A stretch of 64,000 nt of DNA from Macrostomum lignano (taxonomy: Eukaryota), in assembly GCA_002269645.1 (NCBI GenBank), contig NIVC01001275.1:219539-283538 (forward strand), written 5' to 3'. A model generated the notes under the pieces. It saw only the letters and a program-made list of their open reading frames with translations. It had not been told where the DNA came from and ran no database searches. Below, piece by piece: positions 11,649-43,462 of this stretch. The stretch's first letter is position 1, and each line of letters starts with the position of its first letter. A program made the translations under genes and the position numbers.

Positions 11649-11649
11649 G

Positions 11650-11940
11650 CTCCCCTAGATAGCAAGCATCCCCAAGATAGCAAGCATCCCCCAGATAGCA
11701 AGCATCCCAAAGTTAGCAAGCATCCCCCAGATAGCAAGCATCCCCAAGATAGCAAGCATCCCCCAGATAGCAAGCATCCCCAAGATAGCAAGCATCCCTC
11801 AGATAGCAAGCATCCACCAGATAGCAAGCATCTCCCAGATAGCAAGCATCCCCCAGATAGCAAGCATCCCCAAGATAGATAGCATCTCCAAATAGCAAGC
11901 ATCCCCAAGATAGATAGCATCCCCAAATAGCAAGCATCCA
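11650..11940. repeat. 18-bp minisatellite
   Basis: GATAGCAAGCATCCCCCA units; source of the DSKHPP pseudo-ORF. Confidence 0.95.
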
Positions 11941-12039
11941 CCAGACAATAAGTAGCTAGTGCGACAATTTCCTTAGCATTATAGCGGCTCCTTTAAAATT
12001 CGCTTACTTTTACGTTTGAAATTGTGTATCTTTTATGTT

Positions 12040-12805: not shown

Positions 12806-13885
12806 TTCGTATTTTGTGTTTTTTAAGGTGTTTTAATAAAAAAAACATTTTTCACTACTAAGATTCGAACCAAGGTCGCTACATTAGCATTCCAGTCTGT
12901 TTGCATCCGGCTATCTCTTTTCAATTGGAGAACATGACTTGTGGCCCTTATAATTCAATACTTACAGCAAGTCGGTTAGAGTAAAAAGTTATGACATAAT
13001 CAATTTCTCAGTCAGCCAGTATCAGTCTCAATTTAAGTTAGCAATAGGGTTACGCAATTTCAATCAAGTCTTGTGTGCGTTTCTGTGGCACTGTTTTCAC
13101 CTTGTTGTGATGCAATCTTTATCACAATCGGAATTGAGCCAGTCAGTTTTTTCTCTAGCATTCTTACAATGCATTTCAAGTCGAAAATTTGGCTTGACCT
13201 TTGCAAAAAAGCATGTTTTTCGAATATTTAATCCCTTTAACATTGAGCAATTTCTTAGCCAAGATGCATGTACCGTGCCAGGAAAATTTCTGATCGAATG
13301 GTGCAAGTTTGAAGAAAATCGGTTGAGCCAATTTTTCTGAAATCTATCGCATAGCTACAGACATTTCATTTTTAGTATATAGGAGGATGCTTAGTAGTAA
13401 ACCCGAAGGGTGAAGACGCTTTGGTGAAAAGTTGTTTTTTACAAAAAATTCTATAGTTTTTCCCACAGCCATTTTTATGCGCAATATGTTATTCTATCAC
13501 TATGCCAATGGCATCAATATGCCAATAATAAATGAATAACCAATTTTACAACATTTTTTCAATCAATTATTAATCAATTAAACGCATTAGAAGCATTATA
13601 GGCCCTAAAGTCTCTAAAAAGTCGCAAAAGAAGTGCTTGGCAGATAGAAAATGCATGCCTATCTACTATCACCTATGGCTATAAACCCAGTGAGCTATAA
13701 ACTTGGCAAAATGACACAAAATTTGGCAAACAAAAATGCATTGAAAATTTTCGTGTATTCTTTGGCCTAGCAAGCATTGCAACTCTGTTCAATAGAAGCC
13801 ATTCCCATTTTTTCACCAGTAGGGCCTATTATTAAATAATTGATAAAACAAGGGTGGGGGTTAATTTTACTAAGTAATAATAGGC

Positions 13886-15304
13886 CTAGTTCCCAGTGAG
13901 CTCCGCGAAACCCACAAACCCAAGGACACGCGCGAAGCGCGTGTCCTTGGGTTTGTGGGGTGAGCGGAGCGAACGCGCGAGGCACAAAGTGCCGAGCATG
14001 AGGAACAAACAGCCAGCCAATGCGCGAAGCGCATTGGGTGGTCTGGCTTGTGACGAATATAATAATATGAGACGTGTGCATCGAAAAAATGACAAGAAAA
14101 ATCTCACAAAAACTGCTGTAACTTCAAAACTACAAGTGCGAATTTCACAAGTGAGGTGTCATTTTAAAGAGAAGAATCTGATCTATTTAACGAGTATAGT
14201 TTTGTATGGATTCACTGCGGAGAAAAGGAACAGGCTTCAGTTGAAATGTTTGTCTTAAGATTATGTCTTTACAAAAGTGCATTTCCTCATGCACATTAAA
14301 ACTCGAGCTAAAAATGTTCGAGGGTTATAGGTGCGCCTTACTAAGATGCATAACATTATTGGGTTGTTTTTTTCAATTGTATCAAAAAGTTGGCACTTTG
14401 GTTGCAAAAAATGCAAAAATTGAAAATGTACTTTTACAGTTTTTTGCATTTTTTTCTATACTGCTAATAGTTAAGCATACATACTATGCACCAATTGATG
14501 CGCAATTCAAAGATACACAAGTGTGGAAGTTTTCAATTCTTAAACATTTGAAATCAGAAAGTTATCGACGAAAGACTAAAAATCATGATCTCAAACTGAT
14601 TTGAGGAAAAGTGCTCATTATAATTTTTGGAATATGGAAGAAACAATTCAACGCCGTCATCTAATTCCAAACTAACTGTACTTTAAGGTACTGCGATGAT
14701 TTTTTTATTGAAAGAGCGAAACCTGTTTAAATATTTGAAAAAATGGAAAAAAAGTACCTTTTTTCATAGAAATACACTCTTTTGACTGCTTAATCCGATT
14801 TCCAACAACAAAATAGTTGCTTTCCTGCTGGTGCAAACCGTTATTAGGGTGAATTTTCAAAATTGCATACTGTGCCAAAAGTAAACTGAAGCTTAATATT
14901 TATAAACATTAGAAACGGGACCACTAATGGGTATTTTACTTTGGTTACTTACTATGGACTAAACTGGCACTGGCAGAGACAGATTTGAGAGAAACTAATT
15001 GCTCCATTGTATTTGTATTTGGCTCCAGCGTTACAAATTACAATAGCTATTTCGGGGTCTAACCGGCTAAGTTATCAAAAAAGCTAGATACCAATCACCA
15101 GTTTCATCATCAGCTATACCTACCACGATTTTATAGTCACATGCAACAGTAATACCCTCCTTTAAAAGTTTTCAATATCTAAAATGATGTGTTAAATTTT
15201 ATAAAATTTCATAAACAGTGAAATTTTAGCTGTTTACGTGCTGGTGGTTTGAACGTAGCTACTTTGTGCGAAAATACACTGTCATTAATACCGTACCTAT
15301 TATT
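13886..15304 (+). mobile_element. Unclassified interspersed repeat tipped by GCGAAGC-loop hairpins
   Basis: Perfect 23-bp stem (13911-13933 / 13937-13959, loop GAA) and a second stem at 14017-14037. About 13926-15304 is duplicated at 28484-29858, with identical ORF translations. Confidence 0.7.
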
Positions 15305-17832: not shown

Positions 17833-19753
17833 TCTCTACATATAAAAATCAAAACTTTGTCTGTCTGTCTGTCTGTGTGTGGACAATTTTGATCGCTATG
17901 GACTCCCAAACCGCTCAACCAAATTACACCAAACTTTACACCCACCCTAAACTTACTACGGAGAATGTCTTAGGCTACCTTTTAATTTCCTAAATTTGAG
18001 TCTTCCTACCTAAAAGTACAAAAAAACTGCTCAAAATGCGCGATTTTTTCACTTAATCCTCCATAGCGCCGCTCCACTTCTACCGATTCTCTTCAAATTT
18101 GACACAGGCAATTTTCAACTATTTTGACACAATCGTGTAAAATTTCAAATCTCAAAGTTAATCCTGAAAGCCGCTGTGCACTTTTAAAGTTTGGCTGTTT
18201 TTTTCAGCGTAGCAACCACCCCAACCTCCACCCGCCTGCCTCTCTTTCCCGATCCCGATCTGGGCCCAGATGTGTAAAAGGGTTTCAAAATTGACTAACT
18301 TTCAGCTGCCATAAGTTTGCTCCACGTAAAGCGATTGACTTCAAACTTGACACAATTCTTCATTGACTCATTCTCTGTCTAAATGTAAAGTTTCAACTCT
18401 GTAACTCAACCGAAAAAGAAACTGTAAGCATGTGAAGTTTGTCTGCTTTTTCTGTTGTTTGTGCCACTCACTCACTCATTGCCCCAGAGCCAGACGAAGG
18501 GTCAGGCGATAGGACTGAATGTACATAGCAAATGTACAGTGTTTTGGATTAACTTTATTTATAGCCTTCTCTGCACCCCGAGAGTGGAGAGGCTACGTTT
18601 AGCCATAACAGTTTAGTGAGAAATTCTAACCACTGCCCTCCCCTCTGTATTGGCAAACTCTGCAGCAGTTTAACAGTGGATGGCAATTGGCAAATCGAGG
18701 GAATCCAGCATGGTTTGTAAAAGCTAAAGATTTATGAAAAGGCGATGTGATGCAATGCAATACAACCCTACTAAATTAGGCACACCAGGGAAATTTTAGG
18801 TTTCTTTTAAAGGTACTATGTAAATTTTAAATGGCCTCCTAAGAAATGCGTATTTCCTTGGTTTTTAGACTGATGCAGACTGCAGTGGAGCTGAAGATAC
18901 ACAAATTCCTTTCAGGACTGCAAATTAGCAAGAAAGATGACGTGATCCAAGCATGAGAACAACCATGAGTGTACTACGTCCCACAAACTGGCTTTCCAAG
19001 CAGGGATGGGCAGACTTTTACCTCAAAGGCCAGATAAAGAATCCAGCTCATAGCTAAGGGGCAGATGAAAGTGGAAAGAAGAAGGAATAGACGATTCGAA
19101 GAGAGGAGAGGCGACAGAGGGGATAAAAGAAAAGATAAAAGATAATAGGAGAGATGAGGGGGTGAGGACGATGAGAGAGAGGGGAGAGAGGAAAAGCGAG
19201 AGGAGAGAGTAGAGATGAGAGAACAGAGAGCTGCAGATGAGAGGAGAGAGGAGACAGCAGAGAGGAGAGCAGAGAGGAAACAGGTGAAAGAAGAGATGAG
19301 AGAGTAAAGGGAAGAGAGAAGAGATAAAGATACATCTCTACATCTCTAAGGTTCTAGAGATGAGAGAGATGGAAGGAGAGATAAGAGATAACAGAGAGAG
19401 GAGAGTGGAGTGAGAGAAGAGAGGGAGACAGAGTATAGAAAAGGGAAGAGAAGAGAAAAGAAGAAAGGAGAAAGGAAAGTGAGGAGTCAAAAGAGGGGAA
19501 AGAAAAGAGTACAGAGGAGAGAGGTGAGAGAACATATAAGACAGAGATGCCAGATTAAAGAGGGGGGATGAGAGAGCAGAGACGAGAGTGAACAGATAAA
19601 AGATGGGAGAGTAGAGAGAACAGAGGAGAGGTTACAGAGACGAGAGGAGAGAGGAGAGACAAAGGTAGAGAAGTGAGTGAGGAGAGAGGAGCGGAAAGAG
19701 GAGAATGGAGAGGGGAGAGGGGAGAGAGAGAAGGAGAGATAAGAGAGAAAGAC

Positions 19754-19831
<78 letters not shown>

Positions 19832-20394
19832 GGGAGCAGAGAGAAATGAGAAGAGATAAAAGATAAAAAAAGAGAAAGGAATGATAAGAGAGCAAAGACG
19901 AGAGAGAAAAGAGGTGAGGGAAGAGACGAGAGAAGAGGGGAGAGATGAGAGAGGAGAGGGGGAGAGAGGAGAAAGGAGAGGAGAGAGAAACGAAGAGACA
20001 AGAGATGAGATAAGAGAGATGAAAGAGAAGAGAGATAAGGGAAGATACGAGAGGAGAGAGGAGAGAGGAGAGACGAGGGACAAGAGAGATGAGAGGAAAC
20101 AAAGAGACGATAGAAGGATCCAAGGGACGTAGGGAGAGTCAGGGAGAGACCAGAGTTTAGCAGTATATGTTTTAGAGACAGACAGACATTGCCTGACATT
20201 CTGCGCAGTACCCCAGCCAACAATGTCTCAAACCCTAATTTTAGACGAATGTGCTCCATTTTATGTCTACCTCTATCCTACTAACTATTAACAAGTTTTT
20301 GTTTGTGTATGGCCTTAGATTTCAGAATACATGCAAAAGTAGTTCCGGGTATTGGAATTCCTCGGGTTCAAAATCCGCGGGTTTCAACAGCTTG
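17833..20394 (+). mobile_element. Non-autonomous Helitron-like element with (GTCT)n and AG-rich core
   Basis: 5' A|TCTCTACATATAAAAATCAAAACTTTGTCTGTCTG; 3' GC-rich stems then CAACAGCTTG|T. Homology to the inverted copy breaks exactly at these ends (32451 and 25256). The 3' tetranucleotide is CTTG rather than canonical CTRR. Confidence 0.75.
19050..20130. repeat. AG-rich low-complexity tract with perfect (AG)n
   Basis: Perfect AG run at about 19762-19824 within degenerate purine-rich sequence. Confidence 0.95.
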
Positions 20395-22626
20395 TTAATT
20401 ATAAAGAATTAATAAAGTTAAAAATGTTATATTACTTTTACTAAATAATAGTATTTTTAGCATTAAAATAGCAATAAAATTAAAAGATATAATTAAAAAT
20501 AAAATAGCATTAAAATGGTAACCAGAATAAACAAATGAAAATAAAAAAAGGTTACAAATGACTTTCAATTTTTGGGATATATGCAAGCATATCCTAGAAC
20601 CATGATACCTATGAGTTGGCTAGTCTAGTCATATTAAAGCTACAAAAAGCAGCTATGCAATAGTATTACTATCTTGATTACATATTTAGCTATCATTGAG
20701 GCATTACCCAACCATTGTCTATCAACTATTTGTGACCAGGTTAGCAAAATTCACTCATTTCCCTAAGTTACATTGGTGTAGATAAATCAAGTGACTAGAA
20801 TTATATATATGCATGTAATGAAACCTTTGTAAGATAAAAAACAATGCAAGAAAAAGTAACATTGATGCTGGCAAGTGCCAAACTGGCTAACTATAGGTAT
20901 TAGTATAAAACAATTTGAAGCATGCAGCTCTATTTTGCTTTTGCATTTAATTTCTATAGGAATAAAACATTCTCCATATGCAGAAGCAAATGGTACAAGC
21001 ATGAAGAAGCTAGAGATGAAGTATATGTGTAGTATATCCTATATATCATACTGAAATTCAAACCTTACTACATTATACCTTTCCCTATAATACATATTTA
21101 CCTAAAGTCTACAAGTACTTTAAAATGCACTGCCAATAAAACACAATAGAGATACTTGCAATAATTGCTAAGTAGAATAATAATTTATTTTGGAAGCAAA
21201 TAGAAGTCACAAATTTTCTTTGCGACATGCTTCTTATCACTGTACAAATTGTAGCCGTAGCATATAGCTTAGTTATTGGATGTCTAATATTAGCCTTGAA
21301 CCAATGATAGTTGGAACCAATGATAGGGACAAACTCTACTACTGAATACTAACTACAAAAGTGAGAAAAAGGGCTTATTAGAATGCAATAAACACAGCCT
21401 TTCTGTCCTCTCTCCCTTTCTCTTTGTCCTTAATCTCTTTAATTTAAGTTTCTCTTTAATTGTCCTATATCCTCATGCTTCTTATATGGCATCTTTACTT
21501 CTCTTTCTCTATTATTTAAGAAATATTTAAAATTCAAAATTAAAATTGATTTGATTTTTTTAATTTAAAACCTGATTGCTAGGTGGCTTGCAGTATGTTA
21601 TACACCTGCTGGCCATCTCTTAAAATGCATGTTTGATATAATATAGTGCAAAATTTAAAACTGGCCCCTATCCTATCCCTTTCAATTATTAAATCAACAG
21701 CTCCAATGGAAAAAGTCTTACTAAAATATTACTAGATATGGAAAGTATATGTTCCTTTCATATGCTTTGTCTAAAAAACCTTTATATCTATAACTTCTCA
21801 TAGCCATATCTATAGCTACAGTGGAACTCTAATGCGTGACCTTGGCCTTGGTAGGATATAACAAATAATGACAGTAGCATGGTAGAGGCAGCTATGTGAT
21901 CAGGCATAGCTACCCAGCCTACCATCAAACACTTTGTTGAACCACATTCTGCCATGTCCAGCACCTATTGACCAAGTCAAAAGGCACCTTGTCCTTGATA
22001 GAACTTCATGTCATCAATTTTGCAATTTATGCCAGCTAGATTGACTGGGTTAACCAACAGTTATGCATGTATATTTGGATATGTATGCATGCATGTATAT
22101 GCTCATGCATTTAGCATACTGGAAGCATTAATCATAATAAATATAATAATGGGTATAAATTGCTAGATAAATAGGAGATGCCACTTTTATTCACCTTTGC
22201 TTTTGGCAAGGCATCAATACCCTAATTTATATAGTAATGTAACTACTAATATTAGTAGTATTACTACTACTGCACTAACTTGCCCAAAGCCACTGGAAAT
22301 TGAACAAACTACCAGTATAAGCTAAAAGCTGAGTTCTCTGACATCACTAAGGCCTGGCTTTCTAGATCTTTGCATTAATTCATATTCTCAAATGTAGTAT
22401 AAGAATATACATATTTTTCTAAAGCATCAGGTTGAAGAATTCTAACTCCCAGCAAAAGTTCGATAACTTAGAGATAAGTATGTTACATTTAGAAGCGTGT
22501 ATAAAAAACTAAGGTTTTAACAGTCCCCGCTGTTATTGTGCTTTATTTTGTGTGAATATGTTATCACACGAAGAGAAATCAGTTGGAATTTAGCGAATTA
22601 AAACAAAAACACACTGCAGCTGCGCA

Positions 22627-24643
22627 ATGTCGGACAAGTGCTGCTATTTAGTGGAGTTCGATTACAAAGCCGACCAGGAGGACGAGCTCTCCATAGTCAA
22701 AGGCGAGCTGCTGTACGACGCCGAGCCGGAGGAGGACGGCTGGCTTCGCGGCCGGAACTCGGCGGGCAGGCGCGGCCTGTTCCCTGACAATTTTGTTAAA
22801 CCGTGCCGCCTGGCCACCCTGCGCCGGGTTGACCCGAAGCTGCGCGCCTCCGGCTTGGAGGCCAATTCGGCTGTCTATGCGATGGAGCCGCTGCCAGCTG
22901 CCGGATCCGCCGCTGTGGCGACCGTCTACGTGCCCAAGCTGGCCGCCAAGTTTCCCGTCCCGCTGGCCTATCTGGACATTGACGGCGGGGGTGGCCAGCC
23001 GCCGCACGAGCAGCAGCAGCTGCCGTCGCGCCCCCTGCCCGGGATGGCGCCCACCAGCGCAGTCAGGCAGCACCAGCCGAAGCCTGCGCAGTCGGCGACT
23101 GCTGGCGGTTCAGCATCGGCCTCGCTGTCTGATAAGGCCAAGCTGCAGATGCACTCGGACTATGTGAAGGTTAGGGAGGCTGGGTTGGAGTGGCTCGGGT
23201 ATTGGGGCACAGATCCCAATTACAGACACCCAGATCCCAATTACAGACACCCAGATCCCAGTTACAGACACCCAAATCCCAGTTACAGACACCCAGATTC
23301 CAATTACAGACACCAAGATCCCAATTACAGACACCCAGATTCCAATTACAGACACCCAGATCCCAATTTCAGACACCCAGATCCCAATTACAGACACCCA
23401 GATCCCAATTACAGACACCGAGATCCCAATTACAGACACCGAGATCCCAATTACATACACCCAGATCCCAATTACAGAAGCCCGGGTCCCGAATCCATAA
23501 AAATATCCCCATTCACAATCCCTATTTCCATGGCAACGCAGGTGATCCACGCCTACACGGCCCAGCACCAGGACGAGCTGACCCTCCACATCGGCGACGT
23601 GATCCGCGTCACCAACCGCAACCTCAGCGACGACGGCTGGTGGCAGGGCGAGCTGCACGGCCAGGTCGGCGTGTTCCCCGACAACTTTGTTGAGCCCTGC
23701 TCCGCCTCGGCTGCCGCGCCTGCCCGACAGGCCGCCTCCTCGACTGCCGCCGCCGCGCCGGCCCGGCCGCCTGTCAGCGCCGCCGCCCGGCACCAGAACT
23801 CGTCCGGCGGGCTGGACTCCGCCGCTGCACACGCCGGCAGCAACGGCCTGCTGGCTGGCGACCACCCGCAGCGGCAGCCGCTGGCCGACGCGGCAGCTGG
23901 CAGGCCGCGGCCGGTGGCCGGCAAGAGGCCGCCAAACGGAGCCAATCACAGGGGCCCAGTGAGTGTCCTACTGGGGATGGGAATCCCAAAGTGTAGGGTA
24001 TTGGAATCCTACAGTGTAGGGTATGGGAATCCCACAGTGTAGGGTATGGGAATCCCACAGTGTAGTATGGGAATCCCACAGTATAGGGTATGGGAATCCC
24101 ACAGTGTAGGGTATGGGAATCCCACAGTGTAGTATGGGAATCCCACAGTATAGGGTATGGGAATCCCACAGTGTAGTATGGGAATCCCACAGTTGTAGGG
24201 TATGGGAATCCCACAGTGTAGGGTATGGGAATCCCACAGTGTAAAACACGGTAAAGCCAAATCCAGGTGACCGCTGGTTGCTAAGGCCCGCATAGCAACT
24301 GAGCAGCAATCCATTGAACGCCCCGCAGCATCTGGAAGAGGAGGCCAGCCGCACCGAGAGCTCCCAGCTGACCACGGCCGCCACGTCTTACAGCGCGGCT
24401 GGCGGGTCCGGTCAGCAGCAGCCGGAGACGCTCGCTGAACTGCTTCAGGAGGTGCAGCGCCTTCGCTCGGAGGCGGCCCAGCGCGACCGGGAGATCCTGG
24501 AGCTGAGCAGGTTCAAGCGCACGGCTGTTGACAACATCGCGGGCCTGAAAGAGGAGATCGACAATATTAAGAAGAGCTTTCACGCCTGCTGCGTGGACAT
24601 GGACCGGGTGAAGCGGGAGCTGGCCAGCCTCAGCAGTATCTGA
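22627..24643 (+). CDS. CD2AP/CIN85-like adaptor: two SH3 domains, Pro/Ala-rich linkers, C-terminal coiled coil (about 424 aa)
   Basis: Exons 22627-23169, 23542-23958 and 24329-24643, all phase 0 with GT-AG introns. SH3-1 VEFDYKADQEDELSI...GWLRG...GLFPDNFV; SH3-2 VIHAYTAQHQDELTL...DGWWQG...GVFPDNFV; coiled coil LAELLQEVQRLRSE...VKRELASL. Confidence 0.9.
23210..23478. repeat. 21-bp minisatellite in intron 1 of the SH3 gene
   Basis: Unit CAGATCCCAATTACAGACACC, about 13 copies; reads HPDPNYR in the gene frame. Confidence 0.95.
23965..24242. repeat. 21/23-bp minisatellite in intron 2 of the SH3 gene
   Basis: Unit CAGTGTAG(GG)TATGGGAATCCCA. Confidence 0.95.
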
Positions 24644-24873
24644 ATAGGACCGGGTGAAGCGGGAGCTGGCCAGCCTCAGCAGTATCTGAATAGGACCGGG
24701 TGAAGCGGGAGCTGGCCAGCCTCAGCAGTATCTGAATAGGACCGGGTGCAGCGGGAGCTGGCCAGCCTCAGCAGTATCTGAATAGGACCGGGTGAAGCGG
24801 GAGCTGGCCAGCCTCAGCAGTATCTGAATAGGACCGGGTGAAGCGGGAGCTGGCCAGCCTCAGCAGTATCTGA
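24601..24873 (+). repeat. 46-bp tandem repeat of the gene's last codons and stop (6 copies)
   Basis: GGACCGGGTGAAGCGGGAGCTGGCCAGCCTCAGCAGTATCTGAATA starting at 24601, 24647, 24693, 24739, 24785 and 24831. Confidence 0.97.
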
Positions 24874-25912
24874 GCAAATGATAAAGGAATCTGATATTGA
24901 ACAGACATTCACATGAAGTTCATTTGCAATGCACACCACACACCGATTCTGTCAGTTTTTACCATTTTTTTACTTTGTGAGACCCAAGATTAATTATAGT
25001 CATTGCTTCACGAGTATTAGGAATTTACAAGCCGCCCGCAATTCACAAGTAACAAGGGAATTCGCATAGTGCATTTTTCTAATTCACCATTTGAGTTGAA
25101 TGATGTAGCTCGTACATCAACAATCTAATTAGCTTCCTGTGAATTTTCTTCATAATGAATGAATTTATATATGCAGCTGTAACATTATTTGTCATTAATT
25201 ACTAGTAGTGTTCACAACACAAGTTTCGTGAATTTTGTATTTTTTACCATTGGTACAAGCTGTTGAAACCCGCGGATTTTGAACCCGGGGAATTCCAATC
25301 CCCGGAACTATTTTTGCATGTATTCTGAAATCTAAGGCCATAAACAAACAAAAACTTGTTAATAGTTCGTAGGATAGAGGTAGACATAAAATGGAGCGCA
25401 TTCGTGTAAAATTAGGGTCTGAGACATTGTTGGCTGGGGTACTGCGCAGAATGTCAGGCAATGTCTGTCTGACTCTAAAACATATATTGCTAAACTCTGG
25501 TCTCTCCCTGACTCTCCCTACGTCCCTTGGATCTTTTAAAATTTCTATCATCTCTTTGTTTCCTCTCATCTCTCTTGTCCCTCATCTCTCCTCTCTCCTC
25601 TCTCCCCTCTTCTCTCGTATCTTCCCTCATCTCTCTTCTCTTTCATCTCTCTTATCTCATCTCTTGTCTCTTCTTTTCTCTCTCCTCTCCTCTCTCCCCC
25701 TCTCCTCTCTCCTCTCACCCCCTCTTCTCTCTTATCTTCCTTCTCCTTTCTATTCTTTTCTCTCTTCTCTTAACTCTCTCCTCTACTCTCTCATCTCTCC
25801 CCTCTTCTCTCGTCTCTTCCCACACCTCTTTTCTCTCTCGTCTTTGCTCTCTCATCTTTCCTTTCTCTTCTTTTATCTTTTCTCTCCTATCTCTTCTCAT
25901 TTCTCTCTGCTC

Positions 25913-25997
<85 letters not shown>

Positions 25998-27223
25998 TAT
26001 CTCTCCTCCTCTCTCTACTCTCTCCCCTCTCCATTCTCCTCTTTCCTCTCCTCTCTCCTCTCATCTCTGTAACCTCTCCTCTGTTCTCTCTACTCTCCCA
26101 TCTTTTATCTGTTCACTCTCGTCTCTGCTCTCTCACCCCCCTCTTTAATCTGGAATCTCTGTCTTATATGTTCTCTCACCTCTCTCCTCTGTACTCTTTT
26201 CTTCCCCCTCTTTTGACTCCTCACTTTCCTTTCTCCTTTCTTCTTTTCTCTTCTCTTCCCTTTTCTATACTCTGTCTCCCTCTCTTCTCTCACTCCACTC
26301 TCCTCTCTCCGTTATCTCTCATCTCTCATTTCTCATCTCTCCTTCCACATCTCTCATCTCTACAACCTTAGAGATGTAGAGATGTATCTTTATCTCTTCT
26401 CTCTTCCCTTTACTCTCTCATCTCTTCTTTCACCTGTTTCCTCTCTGCTCTCCTCTCTGCTGTCTCCTCTCTCCTCTCATCTGCAGCTCTCTGCTCTCTC
26501 CTGGCCCATCTCTCTTTCTCCTCTAATCTCTCCCCTGTTTCCTCTCCTCTCTCGTCCTTTCTCCTCTTTCCCCGTCCTCTCGGTTCTCTCCCCTCTCCTC
26601 CTCTCTCCTCACTCACTTCTCTCTCCCTTGTCTCCCCTCTCATCTCTTATTTCTATCCTTTTTTCTCTCCACTCTCCCATCTCTCGTCTGTTCACTCTCG
26701 TCTCTGGTCTCTCATCTCCCCTCTCTCATCTGCCATCTTTACTCTCTTATACTCGTATGTTTTCTCACCTCTCTCATCTGTACTCTTCTCTTCCCCTCTT
26801 TTGACTCCTCTTTTTCCTTTCTCCTTTTTCCCTTCTCTTCTCTTCCCTCTTCTATTCTCTCCCTCTCTTGTCTTCTCTCTTCTCTCTTCACTCTCCTCTC
26901 TCCTCTCATATTTCGCGTTCACTCTCATCTTTGCTCTCTACCCCCACTCTCTTCTGTCATCTTTACTCTCCACTCTCCTGTGTACACTTCTCTTTCCCCT
27001 CTACTGAATCCTCTCTTCTTACTCCTCTTCTCTTCCCTCTTCTATACTCTCTCCCCTCTATTCTCTTCTCTTGTCTCTGCACTCTGCTCTCTCTTCCTTC
27101 ATCTCTCATCTCTACTCTCTCATCTTTCCTTTCATCTCTCTCATCTCCACAATCTCATCTATTTCCTCTCTCCTCTTCTTCCCTTTACTCTATCATCTCT
27201 CCTTTCTCCTCTCTTCTTTCTCA

Positions 27224-27294
<71 letters not shown>

Positions 27295-28229
27295 TTTTAT
27301 CTTCTCTCTTCTCACTCCTCTCTACCTCTCTCTCCCCTCCTATCTCCTCTCTGTTCTCTATTCTCTTCTCACTCTTCTCTACTCTCCTCTCTCATCGATC
27401 CTCTGTCTCATCTCTCCCCTCTTCTCTCTTCCTCTTCTCTCCTCTACTCTTTCCTCTCCCTCCTGTCTCCCCTCCTCCTCCCATATTCTCTGCTCTCTCC
27501 TCGTCCTCACCCCACTCGTCTCTCCTGTTATCTTAATATATTCTCTCTTACCCCCCTCTCGCCCTTCCTCTCTTTCTAATAGTCTATTCATTTTCTTTTT
27601 CACTCTCATCTGGCCCGCAGCCATGAGTTGGATTCTTTATCTGGCCTTGAGTTAAAAATCTACCGATCCCTGCTTCGAAAGCCAGTTTGTGGGACGGTAC
27701 TATCATGGTTATCATTTCTCATGCTTTAATCACGTCACCTTTCTGGCCAATTAGCAGCCCTGAGAGGAATTTGTGTATCTCCAGCTCCACCACCACAGTC
27801 TGCACTCTGCAGCAGTCTAACAACCAAGGAAATACGCATTTCTTAGGAGTCATTTAAATTTTAAAGTTACCCTATGCGAAACTTAATGTTAAAAGCTTCA
27901 TGGTGTAACTAATTTAGTAGGATTGCATTGTAATCAGTTATTCATTAATTTTTCGATATTTTTACAAACCATCCCACATCGCCTTGGTTTGCCATCCTTG
28001 TTTAACTGCTGCAGACTTGTCTATTCAGAGGACAGTGGTTTGAAATTGAATCTCTCGCTAAACTCTCTCCTCTCCACGCCTCTCCACTCGCGGGGGTACA
28101 GAGAAGGCTATTAAAAAGTTATTCCAAAACACTGTACATTCGCTATGTACATTCAGTTCTTTCGCCTGACCCTTCGTCTGAGCTGGGGGAATGAGTGAGT
28201 GAGCGGCACAAACAACAGAAAAAGCAGAC

Positions 28230-28483
28230 GAATCCATAAAAATATCCCCATTCACAATCCCTATTTCCATGGCAACGCAGGTGATCCACGCCTACACGGC
28301 CCAGCACCAGGACGAGCTGACCCTCCACATCGGCGACGTGATCCGCGTCACCAACCGCAACCTCAGCGACGACGGCTGGTGGCAGGGCGAGCTGCACGGC
28401 CAGGTCGGCGTGTTCCCCGACAACTTTGTTGAGCCCTGCTCCGCCTCGGCTGCCGCGCCTGCCCGACAGGCCGCCTCCTCGAC
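28230..28483 (+). other. Duplicated fragment of the SH3 gene: end of intron 1, splice acceptor and entire second SH3 domain
   Basis: 254-bp match to 23491-23744. Acceptor CAG at 28278-28280; reading frame VIHAY...QAASS continues into the adjacent repeat as TREARVLGFVG* (stop ends at 28517). Confidence 0.93.
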
Positions 28484-29858
28484 ACGCGAAGCGCGTGTCC
28501 TTGGGTTTGTGGGGTGAGCGGAGCGAACGCGCGAGGCACAAAGTGCCGAGCATGAGGAACAAACAGCCAGCCAATGCGCGAAGCGCATTGGGTGGTCTGG
28601 CTTGTGACGAATATAATAATATGAGACGTGTGCATCGAAAAAATGACAAGAAAAATCTCACAAAAACTGCTGTAACTTCAAAACTACAAGTGCGAATTTC
28701 ACAAGTGAGGTGTCATTTTAAAGAGAAGAATCTGATCTATTTAACGAGTATAGTTTTGTATGGATTCACTGCGGAGAAAAGGAACAGGCTTCAGTTGAAA
28801 TGTTTGTCTTAAGATTATGTCTTTACAAAAGTGCATTTCCTCATGCACATTAAAACTCGAGCTAAAAATGTTCGAGGGTTATAGGTGCGCCTTACTAAGA
28901 TGCATAACATTATTGGGTTGTTTTTTTCAATTGTATCAAAAAGTTGGCACTTTGGTTGCAAAAAATGCAAAAATTGAAAATGTACTTTTACAGTTTTTTG
29001 CATTTTTTTCTATACTGCTAATAGTTAAGCATACATACTATGCACCAATTGATGCGCAATTCAAAGATACACAAGTGTGGAAGTTTTCAATTCTTAAACA
29101 TTTGAAATCAGAAAGTTATCGACGAAAGACTAAAAATCATGATCTCAAACTGATTTGAGGAAAAGTGCTCATTATAATTTTTGGAATATGGAAGAAACAA
29201 TTCAACGCCGTCATCTAATTCCAAACTAACTGTACTTTAAGGTACTGCGATGATTTTTTTATTGAAAGAGCGAAACCTGTTTAAATATTTGAAAAAATGG
29301 AAAAAAAGTACCTTTTTTCATAGAAATACACTCTTTTGACTGCTTAATCCGATTTCCAACAACAAAATAGTTGCTTTCCTGCTGGTGCAAACCGTTATTA
29401 GGGTGAATTTTCAAAATTGCATACTGTGCCAAAAGTAAACTGAAGCTTAATATTTATAAACATTAGAAACGGGACCACTAATGGGTATTTTACTTTGGTT
29501 ACTTACTATGGACTAAACTGGCACTGGCAGAGACAGATTTGAGAGAAACTAATTGCTCCATTGTATTTGTATTTGGCTCCAGCGTTACAAATTACAATAG
29601 CTATTTCGGGGTCTAACCGGCTAAGTTATCAAAAAAGCTAGATACCAATCACCAGTTTCATCATCAGCTATACCTACCACGATTTTATAGTCACATGCAA
29701 CAGTAATACCCTCCTTTAAAAGTTTTCAATATCTAAAATGATGTGTTAAATTTTATAAAATTTCATAAACAGTGAAATTTTAGCTGTTTACGTGCTGGTG
29801 GTTTGAACGTAGCTACTTTGTGCGAAAATACACTGTCATTAATACCGTACCTATTATT
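28484..29858 (+). repeat. Copy of about 13926-15304
   Basis: Constant offset of 14554 bp; begins inside the large hairpin and ends at CCGTACCTATTATT. Confidence 0.95.
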
Positions 29859-30450
29859 CTCTCTCTCTTGCTTCCCCTCTCTCTCTCTCTGCTCCCCCTC
29901 TCTCTCTGCTTTCTCTCTCTGTCCCCCTCTCTCTCTGCTTCCCCCCCTCTCTCTCTGCTTCCCCCCTCTCTCTCTCTGCTTCTCTCTCTCTGCTTCCCCC
30001 CTCTCTCTCTGCCCCCCCTCTCTCTCTGCTTCCCCCCTCTCTCTGCTTCCCCTCTCTCTCTCGCTCTTCTCTCTGCTTCTCTCTCTCTCTCTGCTTCCCC
30101 CTCTCTCTCTGCCCCCTCTCTCTCTGCTTCCCCCTCTCTCTCTCTGCCCCCCTCTCTCTCTCTGCTCTCTCTCTCTGCTCCCTCTCTCTCTGCTGCTTCT
30201 CTCTCTCTCTCTGCTTCCCCTCTCTCTCTCTGCTTCCCCCTCTCTCTCTCTCTCTGCTTCCCCTCTCTCTCTCTCTGCTTCCCCCCTCTCTCTCTGCTTA
30301 CCCCTCTCTCTCTGCTTCCCCCTCTCTCTCTCTCTGCTTCCCCCTTCTCTCTCTCTGCTTCCCCCTCTCTCTCTCTGCTTCCCCCCTCTCTCTCTGCTTC
30401 CCCCCTCTCTCTGCTTCCCCCCTCTCTCTCTGCTTCCCCCCTCTCTCTTA
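29858..30450. repeat. CT-rich compound microsatellite
   Basis: Units about (CT)n-GCTTCCCCC. Confidence 0.9.
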
Positions 30451-33028
30451 TCTCTCCTCTCCCATCTTTCTTCTCCTCTCTACTCTCTCCCCTCCATTCT
30501 CCTCTTTTCTCTCCTCTCGCCTCACTCACATCTCTCTCCCTTTATCTCTCCTCTCGTCTCTGTAATCTCTTCTCTCTTATCTCTCCTCTGTTCTCTCTAC
30601 TCTCCCATCTCTCGTCTGTTCATTTTCGTCTCTGCTCTCAGCTCATCCCCCCTCTTTCATCTGTCATCTTTACTGTCTTATATGTTCTCTCGTTCTGTCC
30701 TCTCTGTACTCTTTTCTTTCACCTCTTTTGTCTCCTCACTTTCCTTTCTCCTTTCTTCTATTCTCTTCCCTCTTCTATATACTCTCTCCCTCTCTTGTCT
30801 CGTCTCTTCTCTCTCCCCTCTCCTCCTTTATCTCTCATCTCTCATCTCTCATCTCATCTCTCCTTACACCTCTCTCATCTGTACAACCTTATCTCTTCTC
30901 TCTTCCAAGTTCCATTTACTCTCTCATCTCTCCTTTCTCCTCTTTACTAACTCCTCTCTGCTCTTTTCTCTGCTCTCCTCTCATCAGCAGCTCTCTGCTC
31001 TCTCCTCTCTACTCGCTCCTCTACTCTCTCCTCTCTACTCGCTCCTCTACTCTCTCCTCTCTACTCGCTCTTCTACTCTCTCCTCTCTACTCGCTCCTCT
31101 CTACTCGCTCCTCTCATCGTCCTCACTCCCTCATCTCTCCTATTATCTTTTATCTTTTATCTTATTCTCTCTCTCACCTCTCCTCTCTTTTCGAATAGTC
31201 TATTCCTTCTTCTCTCCACTCTCAACTGCCCCTCAGCCATAAGCTGGATTCTTTTCTGGCCTTTGAGGTAAAAGTCTGCCCATTCCTGCTTGGAAAGCCA
31301 GTTTGTGGGACGTAGTACTCTCATGGCTGTTCTCATCCCTTGATCATGTCATCTTTCTTGCCAATTTGCAAGCCCTGAAAAGAATTTTTGTATCTTTAGC
31401 TCCACTACAGTCTGCATCAGTCTAACAACAAAAGGAAATACGCATTTCTTAGGAGGCCATTTAAATTTTAAAGTACTTTTAAGAGAAACTTAAAATTTCC
31501 ATGGTGTGCCTAATTTAGTAGGGTTGTTTTTTAATTGCATTGCATCGCCTTTTCATAAATATTTCGCTTTTACAAACCATTCTGGATTGCCTCGATTTGC
31601 CAATTGCCATCCACTGTTAAACTGCTGCAGAGTTTGCCAATACAGAGGGGAGGGCAGTGGTTAGAATTTCTCACTAAACTGTTATGGCTAAACGTAGCCT
31701 CTCCACTCTCGGGGTGCAGAGAAGGCTATAAATAAAGTTATTCCAAAACACTGTACATTCGCTATGTACATTCAGTCCTATCGCCTGACCCTTCGTCTGG
31801 CTCTGGGGAATGAGTGAGTGAGTGGCACAAACAACAGAAAAAGCAGACAAACTTCACATGCTTACAGTTTCTTTTTCGGTTGAGTTACAGAGTTGAAACT
31901 TTACATTAAGATAGAGAATGGGTCAATGAAGAATTGTGTCAAGTTTGAAGTTAATCGCTTCACATGGAGCAAACTTATGGCAGCTGAAAGTTAGTCAATT
32001 TTGAAACCCTTTTACACATCTGGGCCCAGATCGGGATCGGGAAAGAGAGGCAGGCGGGTGGAGGTTGGGGTGGTTGCTACGCTGAAAAAAACAGCCAAAC
32101 TTTAAAAGTGCACAGCGGCTTTCAGGATTAACTTTGAGATTTGAAATTTTACACGATTGTGTCAAAATAGTTGAAAATTGCCTGTGTCAAATTTGAAGAG
32201 AATCGGTAGAAGTGGAGCGGCGCTATGGAGGATTTAGTGAAAAAATCGCGCATTTTGAGCAGTTTTTTGCACTTTTAGGTAGGAAGACTCAAATTTAGGA
32301 AATTTAAAGGTAGCCTAAGACATTCTCCGTAGTGAGTTTAGGGTGGGTGTAAAATTTGGTGTCATTTGGTTGAGCGGTTTGGGAGTCCATAGCGATCAAA
32401 ATTGTCCACACACACACACACACACAGAGTTTTGATTTTTATAGGTAGAGATTGTATACTATTAATATTAATTATACTGTCAGCACCAGAAATCGTATTG
32501 TTTACAAACTTTGTTTGCGAAACTTTATATTGTTTTTAATTGTTGTCTATCTGCTCAACCATTATTGCTATTGGATTGAATCAAGAGCAGAAATTTTTAA
32601 GTTCCGACATTACAGAATCCTTCTTTTATGGCTCTTACCTGCTCTAATTTAGTAGTTTTATTACTGGATTGGATTAACTGTGCTGTGAGGCTTTTTTGGC
32701 CCATTTATTGCATGAAAGTGCAAAGTACAGAAACAATGCGCTTTTCCAAGTTTCATTTATTTACAACATAACGTAACAATCAGATACTGTGCGCTTTCGC
32801 AACCCAACACAGTATTGTTGTCGCCGTGCTTTTTTTAAAGAAGAAAAAACAAATACACTGTGAATTGCAGTGCAAACTAAAGCACATATGACTGTGAAAA
32901 GCAACGTTTTCTGCTCTGCTATTCAATTTAATCAGTGATTTTTTTCTATTATGTCAAATTTTCAAAGGTTTACGAAAGTATCATTTTTGCACGATAGACC
33001 CTACGAGTACTTTTCTAACGCAACTTTT

Positions 33029-40751: not shown

Positions 40752-40824
40752 AATAAACATGGATGCAGAACCTGGAACCCAGAAAAGTAACATCCGGGTT
40801 CCAGGTTCTGCATCCATGTTTATT
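40752..40824. terminator. Perfect 29-bp inverted repeat carrying AATAAA in both arms, just downstream of the transposase stop
   Basis: AATAAACATGGATGCAGAACCTGGAACCC, 15-nt loop, then its exact reverse complement. The minus-strand AATAAA lies about 26 nt after the stop. Function as a poly(A) signal is inferred. Confidence 0.6.
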
Positions 40825-40849: not shown

Positions 40850-43462
40850 TCACTCAAAGTTGAATTTGAAGTGGCCACGGGCATCCAAGGGCACAGGGGG
40901 ATCCAACAGCTTCTGGATGTCAGCCAGTGGGTAGTAAATACAGTCCTTGGACTTTGGCCAGGCGTAGTTCGTGTTGCCGCTTTTCACCATCACATTCACT
41001 TTGTATTCAAACACCCCCTCAGTGTCGTCCAGCTGCCGGATCTTCACAACCTGGCCAGGGAAAACCTCGCCCTCATAGTCGACCAGGACCCACCGGCCCA
41101 CAGCTAGCTCAGCTGCGATGGGGTCAAGACTGGCACTTGGAGCCTCAGCGGACTCTTGGCTCATGCCAGTGAGCAGCCTGCCTGCTGGAACCGGAGTACT
41201 GGCAGCTGCAGGGACCCAGGAAGGCCTTGGCGGCGGAGCACTTGAGACTGGCGCTCGCACAGCAACTTCACTGTCAGTGTCCAGGCACCAGAAGTGGTCA
41301 CGCTGGATGCCCTTGACCTGTTTTAATTGAGATAAATATATATATATATTTATAGTATTTTGTTTTCTGCGTTGTACACATGTACTTTATTTCATTTTCA
41401 AAGATGGGCTGTGATTTCAATGTTCTTAGTTTTTTCTGTTTTATAAATAATTGCCGCATGCACTTAAGTTTATTTTCTTCTTGAGTGCGCCTAAGTAAAA
41501 AAATACAATTTAATCAATGCTGACATTACCGCAGGTGCATCCAGGAGCTGAGACTCGAGGCTGGAGAACTGAGCCTGGATCGTCTCGCTGGCAATGAGCA
41601 CAGTCTCAATGCTGCTGTCCTTCACAGCGTGAACGAAGTCCTGCGCGCTGTGAATGAAGAGCTGACGGGCCTTCACCTTGGTCCAGGCCAGCCGCTTCAG
41701 AACGCCACCGACGCCGTCAATGGCGCCCTTGCCATGGGAAGTGGCAAAAAAATTCCACGTGATGCGCTTGACGCCCGGGTTCTCGGTCAGGAGGATGGCC
41801 AGCAGCTTCATCATGAAACGGTTCTTGAACTGTGAAGCTGGGCCATCACTCCAGAAGTGGACCACCTTGGGCTGCCGAGACTCACAGAACTTCTGGGAAG
41901 GAAAAGCAAGGGAGAAAGGGATGGGGATTGAGACAGAGAGACAGAGAGAGAGAGAGAATGGACTGGGACAAATGGAATTCCTGTAAAAAGTACATAACTA
42001 TGCCTTACCTGCATCAGGTGCCGCAGGAAAGTTGAAATGGCCTCCTTGGAATGATGAAGGTGGTCGCTGACGATGGCCATCATCTTGCTGCCACCTGGCC
42101 AGTAAGCAGCAACAGTGAAAAGTGTTACCTGCGCCTGATTCCAGTAGGCGCTTTGGGCCATGTCCTGCTGGGAGCACGTGTAATTCTCGCTGAAATCGAA
42201 GTGCAGCAGGAGCTCTCCGTCGGCCAGCGCGTCCTTCTGGTTGCGAAAGAAGCTGGCCTGCACCTGCTTCGTCTGGTGGTGAAGGACGAAAGCAGGCAGC
42301 TGCTCAACCAGCATCTTGAACGTGTCGGCCACGGTGAGCTGCACTGGCTGCTGCTGCACGCGGCCGTCCGCCCCGAAATCCCACTGGTGAAAGCGGACCA
42401 CGTGCTCCTTCTCCTCATCAGTTGGTGACACCAGGCGGTGGTTGTCACCTGAAGCACAGCGCTGGCATTGGCCATTGTTGCAATCCAGAGTCGCCGGGTT
42501 GCAGAGGATGAATTCGCCTACCCAGCGCGACGAGTAGGACGGCATGCCAGTGGCACCAGCCAGGGCACTGCAGAGACTGTTTTAATAGAATAATTTGAAA
42601 TGGGTGGCAGTTTGTTAAGAAGTAATATTTAAGTATATGTAACTTAGTACATCTGTCATAATTATGTCGAACTACCTTTTGAAGTTCTCGTGCAGCTTGC
42701 AGCAGCAGGCCTCCAGCGGTGTCTTGGAAAATGTCAGGATGTGACGTGGCCGCAGCTCGCAAAACTTCGACAGCGAGAGCTTGTGCTCTACATGCTCGTG
42801 GATGAACAGGTGGTGCAGCTCCTTCATGCCGGCCACCAGGTAGCGCTTCTGGATCTGCTGACCATTGACTTTGACGTACTCCTTCCGCCCAGGAGTCCAG
42901 CGGGAAACGTCTTCGCGATCAAAAAAGGCAGCCACAGCATCGATGGTCTCGAATGGAATCCGCTCCCGGGAGATCTTCGGGGGGTCAACCAGCTGCACGC
43001 CAAGGTTTTTGGCGAGCTGGCGAACGACTACGCGCTGGTGATCTAGTGATCTTGGCAGACCCTTCCAGGCGCTAGAGTGAAAGAAAGAAAGGGGAATGTT
43101 CTACAAAAAACATCTAGATACACATGTCACACATTGTTACAACCTACAAACATAACTACCTAAAGGTGTCAAATTCAAATGCCAACTTACCGGTTCACAG
43201 CACGATTGAGTGTTTTGCTGCTGCTGTAGGTGGTGCTCTCAAGTGACTCAGCCTCCTGCTGCTGCTGTTCCACCAGTTCACGCCGCCTCTGCCGCATGGC
43301 TTGCATCCGAGCTAGAGCTTGCTTCCGCTGCTTCTCAATCTTTGCAGGGTCCTTCTTCGCCTCACTCCTCCTATCCCGACTCCTCTTCTTCTCCTTCTCA
43401 CGCAACTCGTCTCCCTTCCGAATCCTATAATCACGCTTGACTTCTTTTGATGGCTTTACCAT
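40850..43462 (-). CDS. Intact DDD-type transposase (688 aa), Sola2-like, with C-terminal Tudor-like domain
   Basis: Exons 43462-43191, 43071-42676, 42576-42009, 41892-41530 and 41317-40850 (2067 nt, phases 2,2,0,0, all GT-AG, no internal stop). Motifs LSLSKFCELRP, CCCKLHEN, HFDFSENY, WSDGPASQFKN, WNFFATSHGKGAIDGVGG. The family call is from recalled motifs, not a search. Confidence 0.88.

What the first reader, a model, noticed from the sequence alone, without database searches (positions are those of the whole stretch)
25256..32451. Helitron-bounded 7.2-kb composite that has copied its neighbours: a host SH3 exon and a hairpin-tipped repeat
Seen: the segment starts and ends with the exact termini of the 17833-20394 element, inverted. 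Between a diverged 3' portion and a close 5' portion sit two pieces copied from this same window, 23491-23744 (host gene) and about 13926-15304, both in their source orientation. Junctions show 1 nt (C, 28229) and 3 nt (GAC, 28481-28483) of microhomology. Established: Helitrons capture gene fragments, and template switching (FoSTeS/MMBIR) chains nearby templates. Inference: a very recent capture event with the donor loci still alongside, which is rarely visible.
Basis: partly seen in the sequence, partly recalled or inferred. Interest (0 to 1): 0.8.

Follow-up and report, generated by a model that had tools for sequence, protein, structure and literature searches.

The report
Helitron pair patched with local DNA

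Summary
The window is the last 64 kb of M. lignano contig NIVC01001275.1 (Mlig_3_7).

- **Structure.** 25256-32451 is bounded by the true 3' and 5' ends of a non-autonomous Helitron family. I confirmed those ends on a filled versus empty pair of paralogous sites: A|T target, no duplication, 5'-TC, 3'-CTTG.
- **Copied pieces.** Inside lie a 255-bp copy of 23490-23744 (100% identical) and a 1,377-bp copy of about 13925-15304 (one irregularity, at the junction). Both are in source orientation. Junction microhomology is 1 nt and 3 nt.
- **Corrections to the finding.**
  - The two Helitron parts are different family members. They overlap by about 1.65 kb of element coordinates and are 75-81% identical there, so this is not one element with an insert.
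  - The "exon" is 52 nt of intron plus 203 nt of exon 2. It includes the splice acceptor and the whole second SH3 domain.
  - The second donor shows no sign of being a repeat family. Its copy stops 6-9 nt past the loop of a 71-nt palindrome.
- **Best reading.** A recent, in-place, replication-type template-switch (filler-DNA) repair. This matches the known Helitron filler-DNA model and the known tendency of TE-flanked captures to lie near their parent sequence.
- **Open points.** Mobility and read support are untested. The GenBank gene model PAA69985.1 splices the parent gene's exon 1 to the captured copy; this could be real or a read multi-mapping artefact.

The parts
17833..20394 (+). Reference copy 'A' of the non-autonomous Helitron family (2,562 bp). 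It has a 5' unique part, a mid unique part, a purine tract of about 1.06 kb (88% purine) and a 3' unique part with two short palindromes.
   Evidence: Flanked by A and T. The family boundaries were checked on an empty site.
25256..28228 (-). 'X': the 3' part of a Helitron, missing the first ~609 nt of the family. The true 3' terminus ...CAACAGCTTG is at 25256. X is a mosaic: its mid unique part is 81% identical to A, Y and the L003 copy, while its last 300 nt are 92-97% identical.
28229..28483 (+). Copy of 23490-23744 (100% identical). It holds the last 52 nt of intron 1 with the splice acceptor, plus the first 203 nt of exon 2, which encode the whole second SH3 domain.
   Evidence: It is 98.4% identical to the three other paralogs, so the local gene is the donor.
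28484..29858 (+). Copy of about 13925/13928-15304. It starts 6-9 nt before the loop of the donor palindrome. Apart from a 2-nt slip (or 1 mismatch) at the tip it has no differences.
29859..32451 (-). 'Y': the 5' part of a Helitron, with the true 5' terminus TCTCTACC at 32451. It is 94-97% identical to A in the unique parts. It is cut inside the purine tract, lacks the last ~300 nt, and ends in an array of about 30 units of 19-21 bp (29858-30475).
23490..23744 (+). Donor B, inside the neighbouring gene. Its left end lies about 12 nt after the intronic 21-bp minisatellite (23210-23478). Its right end abuts a GCC-rich stretch.
13900..15304 (+). Donor C. It begins with a 71-nt palindrome at 13900-13970 (34-nt arms, inner 23 bp perfect, GAA loop in a GCGAAGC tip). 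The palindrome's predicted ssDNA folding energy is -42.4 kcal/mol (z = -12.6). A second GCGCGAAGCGC hairpin lies at 14018-14038. The rest is AT-rich with no family hit.
22627..24643 (+). Parent gene, an intact 3-exon CD2AP/SH3KBP1-like adaptor with two SH3 domains. Exon 1 is 22627-23169, exon 2 is 23542-23958 and exon 3 is 24329-24643.
   Evidence: (100% match to UniProt A0A1I8H878)
28281..28517 (+). The terminal coding exon of the GenBank gene model PAA69985.1 (BOX15_Mlig008314g1, 260 aa). It is the captured exon piece read through J2 into C-derived sequence, giving the tail ...AASST|REARVLGFVG*.

Best explanation
Two members of one Helitron family lay head to tail on the minus strand just downstream of a CD2AP/SH3KBP1-like gene (or they formed an older chimera of two members). 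DNA synthesis broke down in the long purine/pyrimidine tract of the upstream member, Y. The free 3' end was then extended on two nearby templates in turn: 1.38 kb lying 14.5 kb away, and 255 bp of the neighbouring gene lying 4.7 kb away. Synthesis then resumed on the downstream member, X, at family position 610.

This is a FoSTeS/MMBIR-type or gap-filling ('filler DNA') repair that does not depend on transposition. It deleted Y's 3' end and X's 5' end and left a 7.2-kb segment that still carries one good Helitron 5' end and one good 3' end.

Shown: the structure, the donors, the direction of copying, the youth of the event, and the validity of the Helitron ends.

Inferred: the replicative mechanism, the prior tandem state, and the direction of synthesis. 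Leftward synthesis (Helitron sense strand) is slightly favoured, because each copied tract then ends at structure-prone DNA: the pyrimidine tract, the palindrome tip and the minisatellite edge.
For: - The donors are intact, in the same orientation, within 15 kb, and identical to the copies at 255/255 and about 1,375/1,377 positions. Helitron copies differ from one another by 3-19% and gene paralogs by 1-4%.
- There are three junctions in 1.63 kb with 1, 3 and at most 1 nt of microhomology and no target duplication.
- The C copy ends 6-9 nt past the loop of a palindrome with a predicted ssDNA folding energy of -42 kcal/mol, with a 2-nt slip there. Only about 4 comparable hairpins exist in 64 kb.
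- Y is cut inside an 89% pyrimidine tract.
- X and Y are not recent duplicates of each other or of A, so both were already in place.
- The family transposes like a Helitron and was active after the homeolog split: L003 and L002 are filled and L001 is empty.
- Precedent: a bias for captures to lie near their parent sequence, and about 2 bp of microhomology, in transposition-independent gap filling (PMC8277862); and the Helitron filler-DNA model (PMC6544945).
Against: - No reads or second assembly were available, so the junctions rest on one Canu/Pilon assembly.
- The microhomologies are short. A 1-nt match has a 25% chance expectation, and the 3-nt one needs an indel.
- The state before the event (a Y-X tandem) is not observed anywhere.
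- The right end of donor B abuts a GCC-rich stretch, so the opposite direction of synthesis is also defensible.
- Pilon polishing with multi-mapping reads could have erased small differences and made the copies look younger than they are.
Confidence: 0.62

Rival explanations
1. Transposition-coupled capture. The template switches happened while the Helitron sense strand of Y was being peeled off and resynthesised by RepHel-driven rolling-circle replication. On this reading the composite is a new chimeric Helitron (Y 5' end, captured DNA, X 3' end) that is or was mobile.
For: - The composite has intact, family-typical 5' and 3' termini and A/T flanks.
- The family was recently active.
- If synthesis ran leftward, it ran in the Helitron sense direction from Y's 5' end, and the exits lie at stalling sequences.
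Against: - The copies are far younger than the divergence among family members.
- The donors are local, which is the signature of single-copy, transposition-independent captures.
- No second copy of any junction is in the 64-kb window or in about 67 kb of paralogous loci.
- No RepHel gene was seen in the window.
Confidence: 0.15
2. Assembly or library artefact. A chimeric long read or a mis-join created the three junctions, and polishing with multi-mapping short reads made the inserted pieces look identical to their sources.
For: - There is only one assembly, from an unusually repetitive, partly redundant genome.
- It was polished with Pilon using Illumina and RNA-seq reads.
- The exact look-ups found no independent contig carrying the junction ORFs.
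Against: - An overlap assembler cannot join sequences across 1-3 nt, so the junctions must lie inside reads.
- Ligation chimeras join random genomic fragments. They would not give two same-strand pieces from within 15 kb, one of which ends at a hairpin tip.
- The PacBio library is not reported as amplified.
- The look-up failures are uninformative, because no M. lignano sequence other than the Mlig_3_7 assembly turned up in any look-up.
Confidence: 0.07
3. End-joining capture. A double-strand break between Y and X was sealed by non-homologous or polymerase-theta end joining that ligated in free DNA fragments already copied from the two donor sites, rather than by continuous template switching.
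For: Very short or absent microhomology at J1 and J3, and a possible untemplated A at J2. Filler insertions at end-joined breaks are well known (reference list of PMC6544945).
Against: Templated fillers made by end joining are usually tens of bp, not 1.4 kb. Free fragments would not be expected to keep a common orientation and come only from the same 15 kb. The hairpin-tip end point fits polymerase dissociation better.
Confidence: 0.08

Closest known systems
Helitron gene-fragment acquisition by the filler-DNA model (for example the stepwise acquisition in Spodoptera Sfru_Hel1A, PMC6544945)
   Same: Foreign host DNA sits internal to Helitron termini. The source loci are identifiable. The junction homologies are short. 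More than one piece is chained.
   Different: Here the donors lie within 15 kb on the same contig and are identical to the copies. The acceptor is two different family members rather than one element. No amplified copies are known. The pieces are antisense to the Helitron.
Single-copy Pack-TIRs made by transposition-independent gap filling (Tan et al. 2021, PMC8277862)
   Same: A TE-flanked duplicate of a small gene fragment, close to its parent (<15 kb). About 2 bp of microhomology. A break at a fragile internal TE site. Chimeric transcripts with the neighbouring gene are frequent.
   Different: The flanking TE here is a rolling-circle Helitron, not a TIR element. Two templates were used. One template tract ends at a palindrome tip.
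FoSTeS/MMBIR complex rearrangements (human genomic disorders and cancer; my own knowledge)
   Same: Serial switches between nearby templates. Microhomology of 0-5 nt. Copy gain with intact donors. Small errors next to junctions.
   Different: The scale here is small (1.6 kb), and the event sits inside transposon DNA, which leaves a unit that could in principle be mobilised.
Chimeric Helitrons formed by end bypass or new 3' ends (maize, bats, Helraiser experiments; my own knowledge)
   Same: A 5' end from one element is paired with the next available 3' end downstream, enclosing whatever lies between them.
   Different: The enclosed DNA here is not the original flank but was copied in from elsewhere. 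Use of the pair of ends in transposition has not been shown.

Membership tests
Helitron (canonical Helitron1-type, non-autonomous) | Insertion between host A and T without target-site duplication | tested here: met
   Empty site in L001...GATTA|TAGGTC. Filled site in L003...GATTA|TCTCTACC...CAGCTTG|TAGGTC. A and the composite also have A and T flanks.
Helitron (canonical Helitron1-type, non-autonomous) | 5'-TC terminus | tested here: met
   TCTCTAC... in A, Y and the L003 copy.
Helitron (canonical Helitron1-type, non-autonomous) | 3'-CTRR terminus | tested here: not met
   All copies end CAGCTTG (CTTG), including a diverged subfamily in L001. This is a lineage variant of the terminus.
Helitron (canonical Helitron1-type, non-autonomous) | Short palindrome about 10-20 nt before the 3' end | tested here: inconclusive
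   Two conserved palindromes are present: CCGGGG..CCCCGG and AAATCCGCGGGTTT, the latter 10 nt from the end. Their folding energies are not better than shuffled sequence, z = -0.3 to -0.75.
Helitron (canonical Helitron1-type, non-autonomous) | No terminal inverted repeats (and no Helitron2/Helentron-type asymmetric repeat) | tested here: met
   10 of 40 terminal positions match. No inverted copy of the 5' 16-mer occurs in the last 400 nt.
Helitron (canonical Helitron1-type, non-autonomous) | An autonomous RepHel partner in the same genome | not testable with these tools
   No Rep or helicase domain was found in the window ORFs. The rest of the genome could not be searched.
Helitron gene capture (mobile captured fragment) | Captured host fragment between valid Helitron ends, with an identifiable parental locus | tested here: met
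Helitron gene capture (mobile captured fragment) | The same chimeric junctions present at other insertion sites, i.e. the composite has transposed | not testable with these tools
   Each junction 30-mer is unique in the window and absent from L001-L003. No genome-wide search was possible.
Replicative template switching (FoSTeS/MMBIR, gap filling) | Two or more switches between nearby templates, intact donors, microhomology at junctions | tested here: met
   Three junctions. Donors lie 4.7 and 14.5 kb away. Microhomology is 1 nt, 3 nt (with a 2-nt slip) and at most 1 nt. The microhomology alone is only weakly above chance.

The most novel reading that the evidence does not exclude
This may be a caught-in-the-act case of exon shuffling. 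On this reading, the switches occurred during rolling-circle strand replacement of a Helitron, with each copied tract ending where the polymerase met structured DNA (a purine tract, a palindrome tip, a minisatellite edge). The resulting unit can be mobilised. Its captured splice acceptor plus SH3 domain is already spliced to exon 1 of the parent gene, producing a truncated two-SH3 adaptor, as the GenBank model PAA69985.1 suggests.
Probability: 0.12. Interest if true: 0.7.

Novelty: new member of a known kind. Interest (0 to 1): 0.35.

Why it matters
- It is an unusually clean, very young example of how a transposon-bounded segment picks up a functional module (a splice acceptor plus a complete SH3 domain). 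Both donors are still next door and every junction can be read to the base.
- It would let the filler-DNA / template-switch route of Helitron gene capture be examined directly in a transgenic-tractable animal.
- The end point at a palindrome tip is a concrete clue to where such switches happen.
- Practically, it flags a likely problem in the public annotation. The only GenBank gene at this locus (PAA69985.1, 260 aa, "partial") joins exon 1 to the captured copy instead of giving the intact 424-aa product.

Tried and rejected
- **Junction ORF look-ups.** Exact look-up of the two junction-spanning ORFs (28143-28661 minus strand, 28269-28517 plus strand) in public assemblies found nothing. This is uninformative, because the only M. 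lignano contigs returned by any look-up were from Mlig_3_7.
- **Metagenome scan.** A scan for the Helitron 3' terminus gave one unrelated chance match, L005.
- **Empty site for the composite.** I looked for a homeolog or empty site of the composite. The three paralogous gene loci (L001-L003) share only 22572-24875 with the window. The nearest other coding ORFs (40.5-43.5 kb) have no significant Pfam match, lie more than 8 kb from the composite, and look like a possible mobile-element gene. I did not pursue this further.
- **Identity of donor C.** An Rfam scan of 12-34 kb gave no credible RNA family. Pfam on the donor-C ORFs gave nothing. I cannot confirm that C is a repeat family.
- **Literature.** There is no mention of Helitrons in the supplements of the M. 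lignano genome paper, and no paper mentions Mlig008314.
- **Readings I rejected.**
  - One Helitron with a simple insertion: X and Y overlap in element coordinates and are only 75-81% identical there.
  - A nested transposon insertion: there is no target duplication, and the flanks are not contiguous in the family.
  - Reverse direction of copying: the gene is continuous with its paralogs, and the donor palindrome is complete.
- **Not run.** I ran no further search on the junction ORFs, because a null result would say nothing.
Full report
**Source of the window.** A protein search with the long ORF at 22627-24042 gave a 99% match to a Macrostomum lignano protein. Fetching the contigs of that protein's cluster members gave locus L004, which is 100% identical to window 12624-38517 over 25,894 bp. 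The window is therefore the last 64 kb of contig NIVC01001275.1 of assembly Mlig_3_7 (GCA_002269645.1); record position = window position + 219,538. That assembly was built with Canu from PacBio reads, polished with Pilon using Illumina and RNA-seq reads, and annotated with a genome-guided transcriptome (PMC5730564).

- Self-BLAST shows 28229-28483 = 23490-23744 (255 bp, 100%) and 28482-29858 = 13928-15304 (1,377 bp, 99.93%). Both are plus/plus.
- The outer parts match the 17833-20394 element in reverse: 30076-32451 at 85.6% and 25256-26500 at 87.6%.
- The terminal 20-23-mers of that element occur exactly twice each in the window, at the four expected positions, with none expected by chance.

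**The ends are real Helitron ends.** Three other loci carrying paralogs of the gene (L001, L002, L003) are syntenic with one another. L003 (and L002, at its edge) carries a 2,697-bp copy of the family; L001 lacks it.
- Empty site: ...GAGGTAAGATTA|TAGGTCTATAAAAA.
- Filled site...GATTA|TCTCTACCTATAAAAATC...CAACAGCTTG|TAGGTC.
- So the element inserts between A and T with no target duplication, starts with TC, and has no terminal inverted repeats.
- It has two short conserved palindromes just before the 3' end, although their folding energies are not better than shuffled sequence.
- The 3' end is CTTG rather than the textbook CTRR. A diverged subfamily also ends CAGCTTG|T, so this looks like a lineage variant.
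- The element has no coding capacity, and its sense strand carries a tract of about 1 kb that is 88% purine.
- The filled/empty difference between loci that are 96-97% identical shows the family moved after those loci diverged.

**Anatomy of the composite, read in Helitron sense (window minus strand).**
- *Y* (32451 to 29859) holds family positions 1 to about 2263. It is 97% identical to A and to the L003 copy in the first 600 nt and 94-96% in the mid unique part. It is cut inside the purine tract and ends in about 30 units of a 19-21-bp motif that is single-copy in A.
- Next come the reverse complement of donor C, then the reverse complement of donor B.
- *X* (28228 to 25256) begins at family position 610 and runs to the true 3' end. 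X is a mosaic: its mid unique part is only 81% identical to A, Y and the L003 copy, while its last 300 nt are 97% identical to the L003 copy and 92% to A.
- X and Y overlap by about 1.65 kb of family coordinates and are 75-81% identical there. The composite is therefore not one Helitron that received an insert. It is the 5' part of one member joined, through copied DNA, to the 3' part of another.

**The donors.** Donor B lies in an intact three-exon gene for a CD2AP/SH3KBP1-like adaptor with two SH3 domains. UniProt A0A1I8H878 matches the window's exons at 100% (exon 1 22627-23169, exon 2 23542-23958, exon 3 24329-24643).
- The 471-aa ORF seen in the raw sequence is an illusion. Both introns are open in frame because they are minisatellites.
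- The copied piece is the last 52 nt of intron 1, with the acceptor ...GCAACGCAG|GTG, plus the first 203 nt of exon 2. It contains the whole second SH3 domain.
- It matches the local gene at 255/255 but the three paralogs at only 98.4%, so the neighbour is the source.

Donor C is AT-rich DNA with no protein or RNA family match.
- It starts with a 71-nt palindrome at 13900-13970 (inner 23 bp perfect, GAA loop within GCGAAGC). The palindrome's predicted ssDNA folding energy is -42.4 kcal/mol, z = -12.6.
- A second GCGCGAAGCGC hairpin lies 90 nt further on.
- The composite holds only the right arm, the loop and 5-8 nt of the left arm. The donor is complete, so the copy is the derived one.

**Junctions.**
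- J1...AAAAAGCAGA|C|GAATCC. The C is shared by the Helitron and donor B.
- J2: ...CCTCCTC|GAC|ACGCG--AAGCGCG. GAC is shared by both donors if a 2-nt CG slip at the hairpin tip is allowed. Otherwise there is one untemplated A.
- J3: ...CCTATTAT(T)|CTCTCTC. At most one shared T.
- There is no target duplication. Each junction 30-mer is unique in the window and absent from the other loci.

**Most likely mechanism.** The pieces are essentially identical to their sources, whereas family members differ by 3-19% and gene paralogs by 1-4%. The donors are intact, in the same orientation and within 15 kb. Three switches are packed into 1.63 kb.
- This is the signature of a single recent replicative repair event with serial template switching (FoSTeS/MMBIR or gap filling), carried out in place.
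- Because X and Y are neither recent copies of each other nor of A, both were already at the locus. The event probably removed Y's 3' end and X's 5' end.
- If synthesis ran leftward (making the Helitron sense strand), each copied tract ends at difficult DNA. Y is left inside an 89% pyrimidine template. C is left 6-9 nt past the loop of the palindrome, where the new strand can snap back on itself; a 2-nt slip sits exactly there. B is left about 12 nt after a 21-bp minisatellite.
- Only about four comparable hairpins exist in the window, so the hairpin coincidence is unlikely by chance (roughly 1%, judged after the fact).
- The direction is not settled, because the other end of donor B abuts a GCC-rich run.

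**What is not shown.**
- Nothing shows that Helitron enzymes made the event or that the composite has moved. It does retain one valid 5' end and one valid 3' end with A and T flanks, so it could in principle be mobilised.
- No reads or second assembly were reachable. Exact look-ups of the junction ORFs found nothing, and a metagenome scan gave one chance hit.
- An artefact seems unlikely, because junctions with 1-3 nt of overlap must lie within reads, and ligation chimeras would not draw two same-strand pieces from the same 15 kb. It still needs checking.
- Pilon polishing could have exaggerated the identity of the copies.

**A consequence for annotation.** The only GenBank gene at this locus, PAA69985.1 (BOX15_Mlig008314g1, 260 aa, partial), joins exon 1 to the captured copy 5.1 kb downstream and reads through J2 into C-derived sequence (...AASST|REARVLGFVG*). 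The copied acceptor is identical to the real one.
- This may be a true alternative terminal exon. The composite lies downstream of the gene on the same strand.
- It may equally be an effect of multi-mapping reads in the genome-guided assembly. Reads containing the J2 30-mer would decide.

**Comparison with what is known.**
- The Helitron filler-DNA model predicts exactly this kind of internal acquisition with short junction homology. Stepwise examples with identified source loci have been described (PMC6544945).
- For TIR transposons in animals, single-copy captures are mostly within 15 kb of the parent, have a median of 2 bp of microhomology, arise without transposition at fragile internal sites, and are often transcribed as chimeras with neighbouring genes (PMC8277862).
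- The present case is the Helitron counterpart. Its particular features are two chained templates, an end point at a palindrome tip, and acceptor sequences from two different family members. It is a new member of a known kind, not a new kind.

**The locus has a history of such events.** The parent gene copy is itself a dispersed DNA-level duplicate. Its homology to the three syntenic paralogs starts 55 bp before the ATG and stops 2 nt after the stop codon. At that point the last 43 nt plus ATA is repeated six times (24601-24873), whereas the paralogs have a single copy.

Noticed in passing
window 22572-24875 (tandem copies at 24601-24873): The SH3 gene copy is a dispersed duplicate that keeps its introns. 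Its homology to three syntenic paralogs (L001-L003) begins 55 bp before the ATG and ends 2 nt after the stop codon. At that point the last 43 nt of coding sequence plus ATA is repeated 6 times at 99% identity; the paralogs have one copy. It looks like another template-switch product.
   Followed up: partly
window 13886-13970, minus strand: Read on the minus strand, the big palindrome of donor C is followed after 10 nt by CTAG. That is the layout of a canonical Helitron 3' end, but the next base is G rather than T. The tip motif GCGAAGC recurs in a second hairpin at 14018-14038. This could be the end of another Helitron family or could be chance.
   Followed up: partly
L003 1711-4407 and L002 1-410 versus L001 2940: A Helitron of the same family is present in two of three syntenic gene loci and absent from the third, with a clean A|T empty site. 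The family therefore moved after these duplicated loci diverged (about 3-4%).
   Followed up: yes
window 23210-23478 and 23973-24243: Both introns of the SH3 gene are minisatellites (21-bp and 23-bp units) that stay open in frame. The raw sequence therefore shows a false 471-aa ORF with a PDPNYRH repeat.
   Followed up: yes
window 22624-23169 + 28281-28517: GenBank model PAA69985.1 (Mlig008314g1) splices exon 1 to the captured exon copy instead of the true exon 2. The intact 424-aa product has no annotated gene at this locus in Mlig_3_7.
   Followed up: partly
window 281-1780; 10001-12807; 45302-46292: Long, well-kept satellites: a 28-bp unit x53 (96%), a 23-bp unit x >100 (about 80%), and a 34-bp unit x29 (95%). 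The last lies inside a 459-aa ORF whose only Pfam hit is an 18-residue match to Pr_beta_C (30.5 bits, cut-off 25).
   Followed up: no
window 4420-4800 (+): An ORF fragment with MULE transposase and ZSWIM1-3 RNaseH-like domains (E = 9e-17). It is the remnant of a Mutator-like element.
   Followed up: no
window 40850-43462 (-): A run of minus-strand ORFs (up to 244 aa) with no significant Pfam match (only a faint DUF7869 hit). It sits next to a 32-nt-arm palindrome at 40752-40824. It may be a mobile-element gene of an undescribed family.
   Followed up: no
window 62862-63440 (+): An ORF with a weak MACPF (perforin-like) domain hit (E = 0.005, below the Pfam cut-off), at the end of the contig.
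   Followed up: no
window 29858-30475: About 30 tandem units of a 19-21-bp motif (TCTCTCTCTCTGCTCCCCC) directly abut junction J3. The motif is single-copy in element A (about 19826-19845). The array may be linked to the instability that caused the break.
   Followed up: partly
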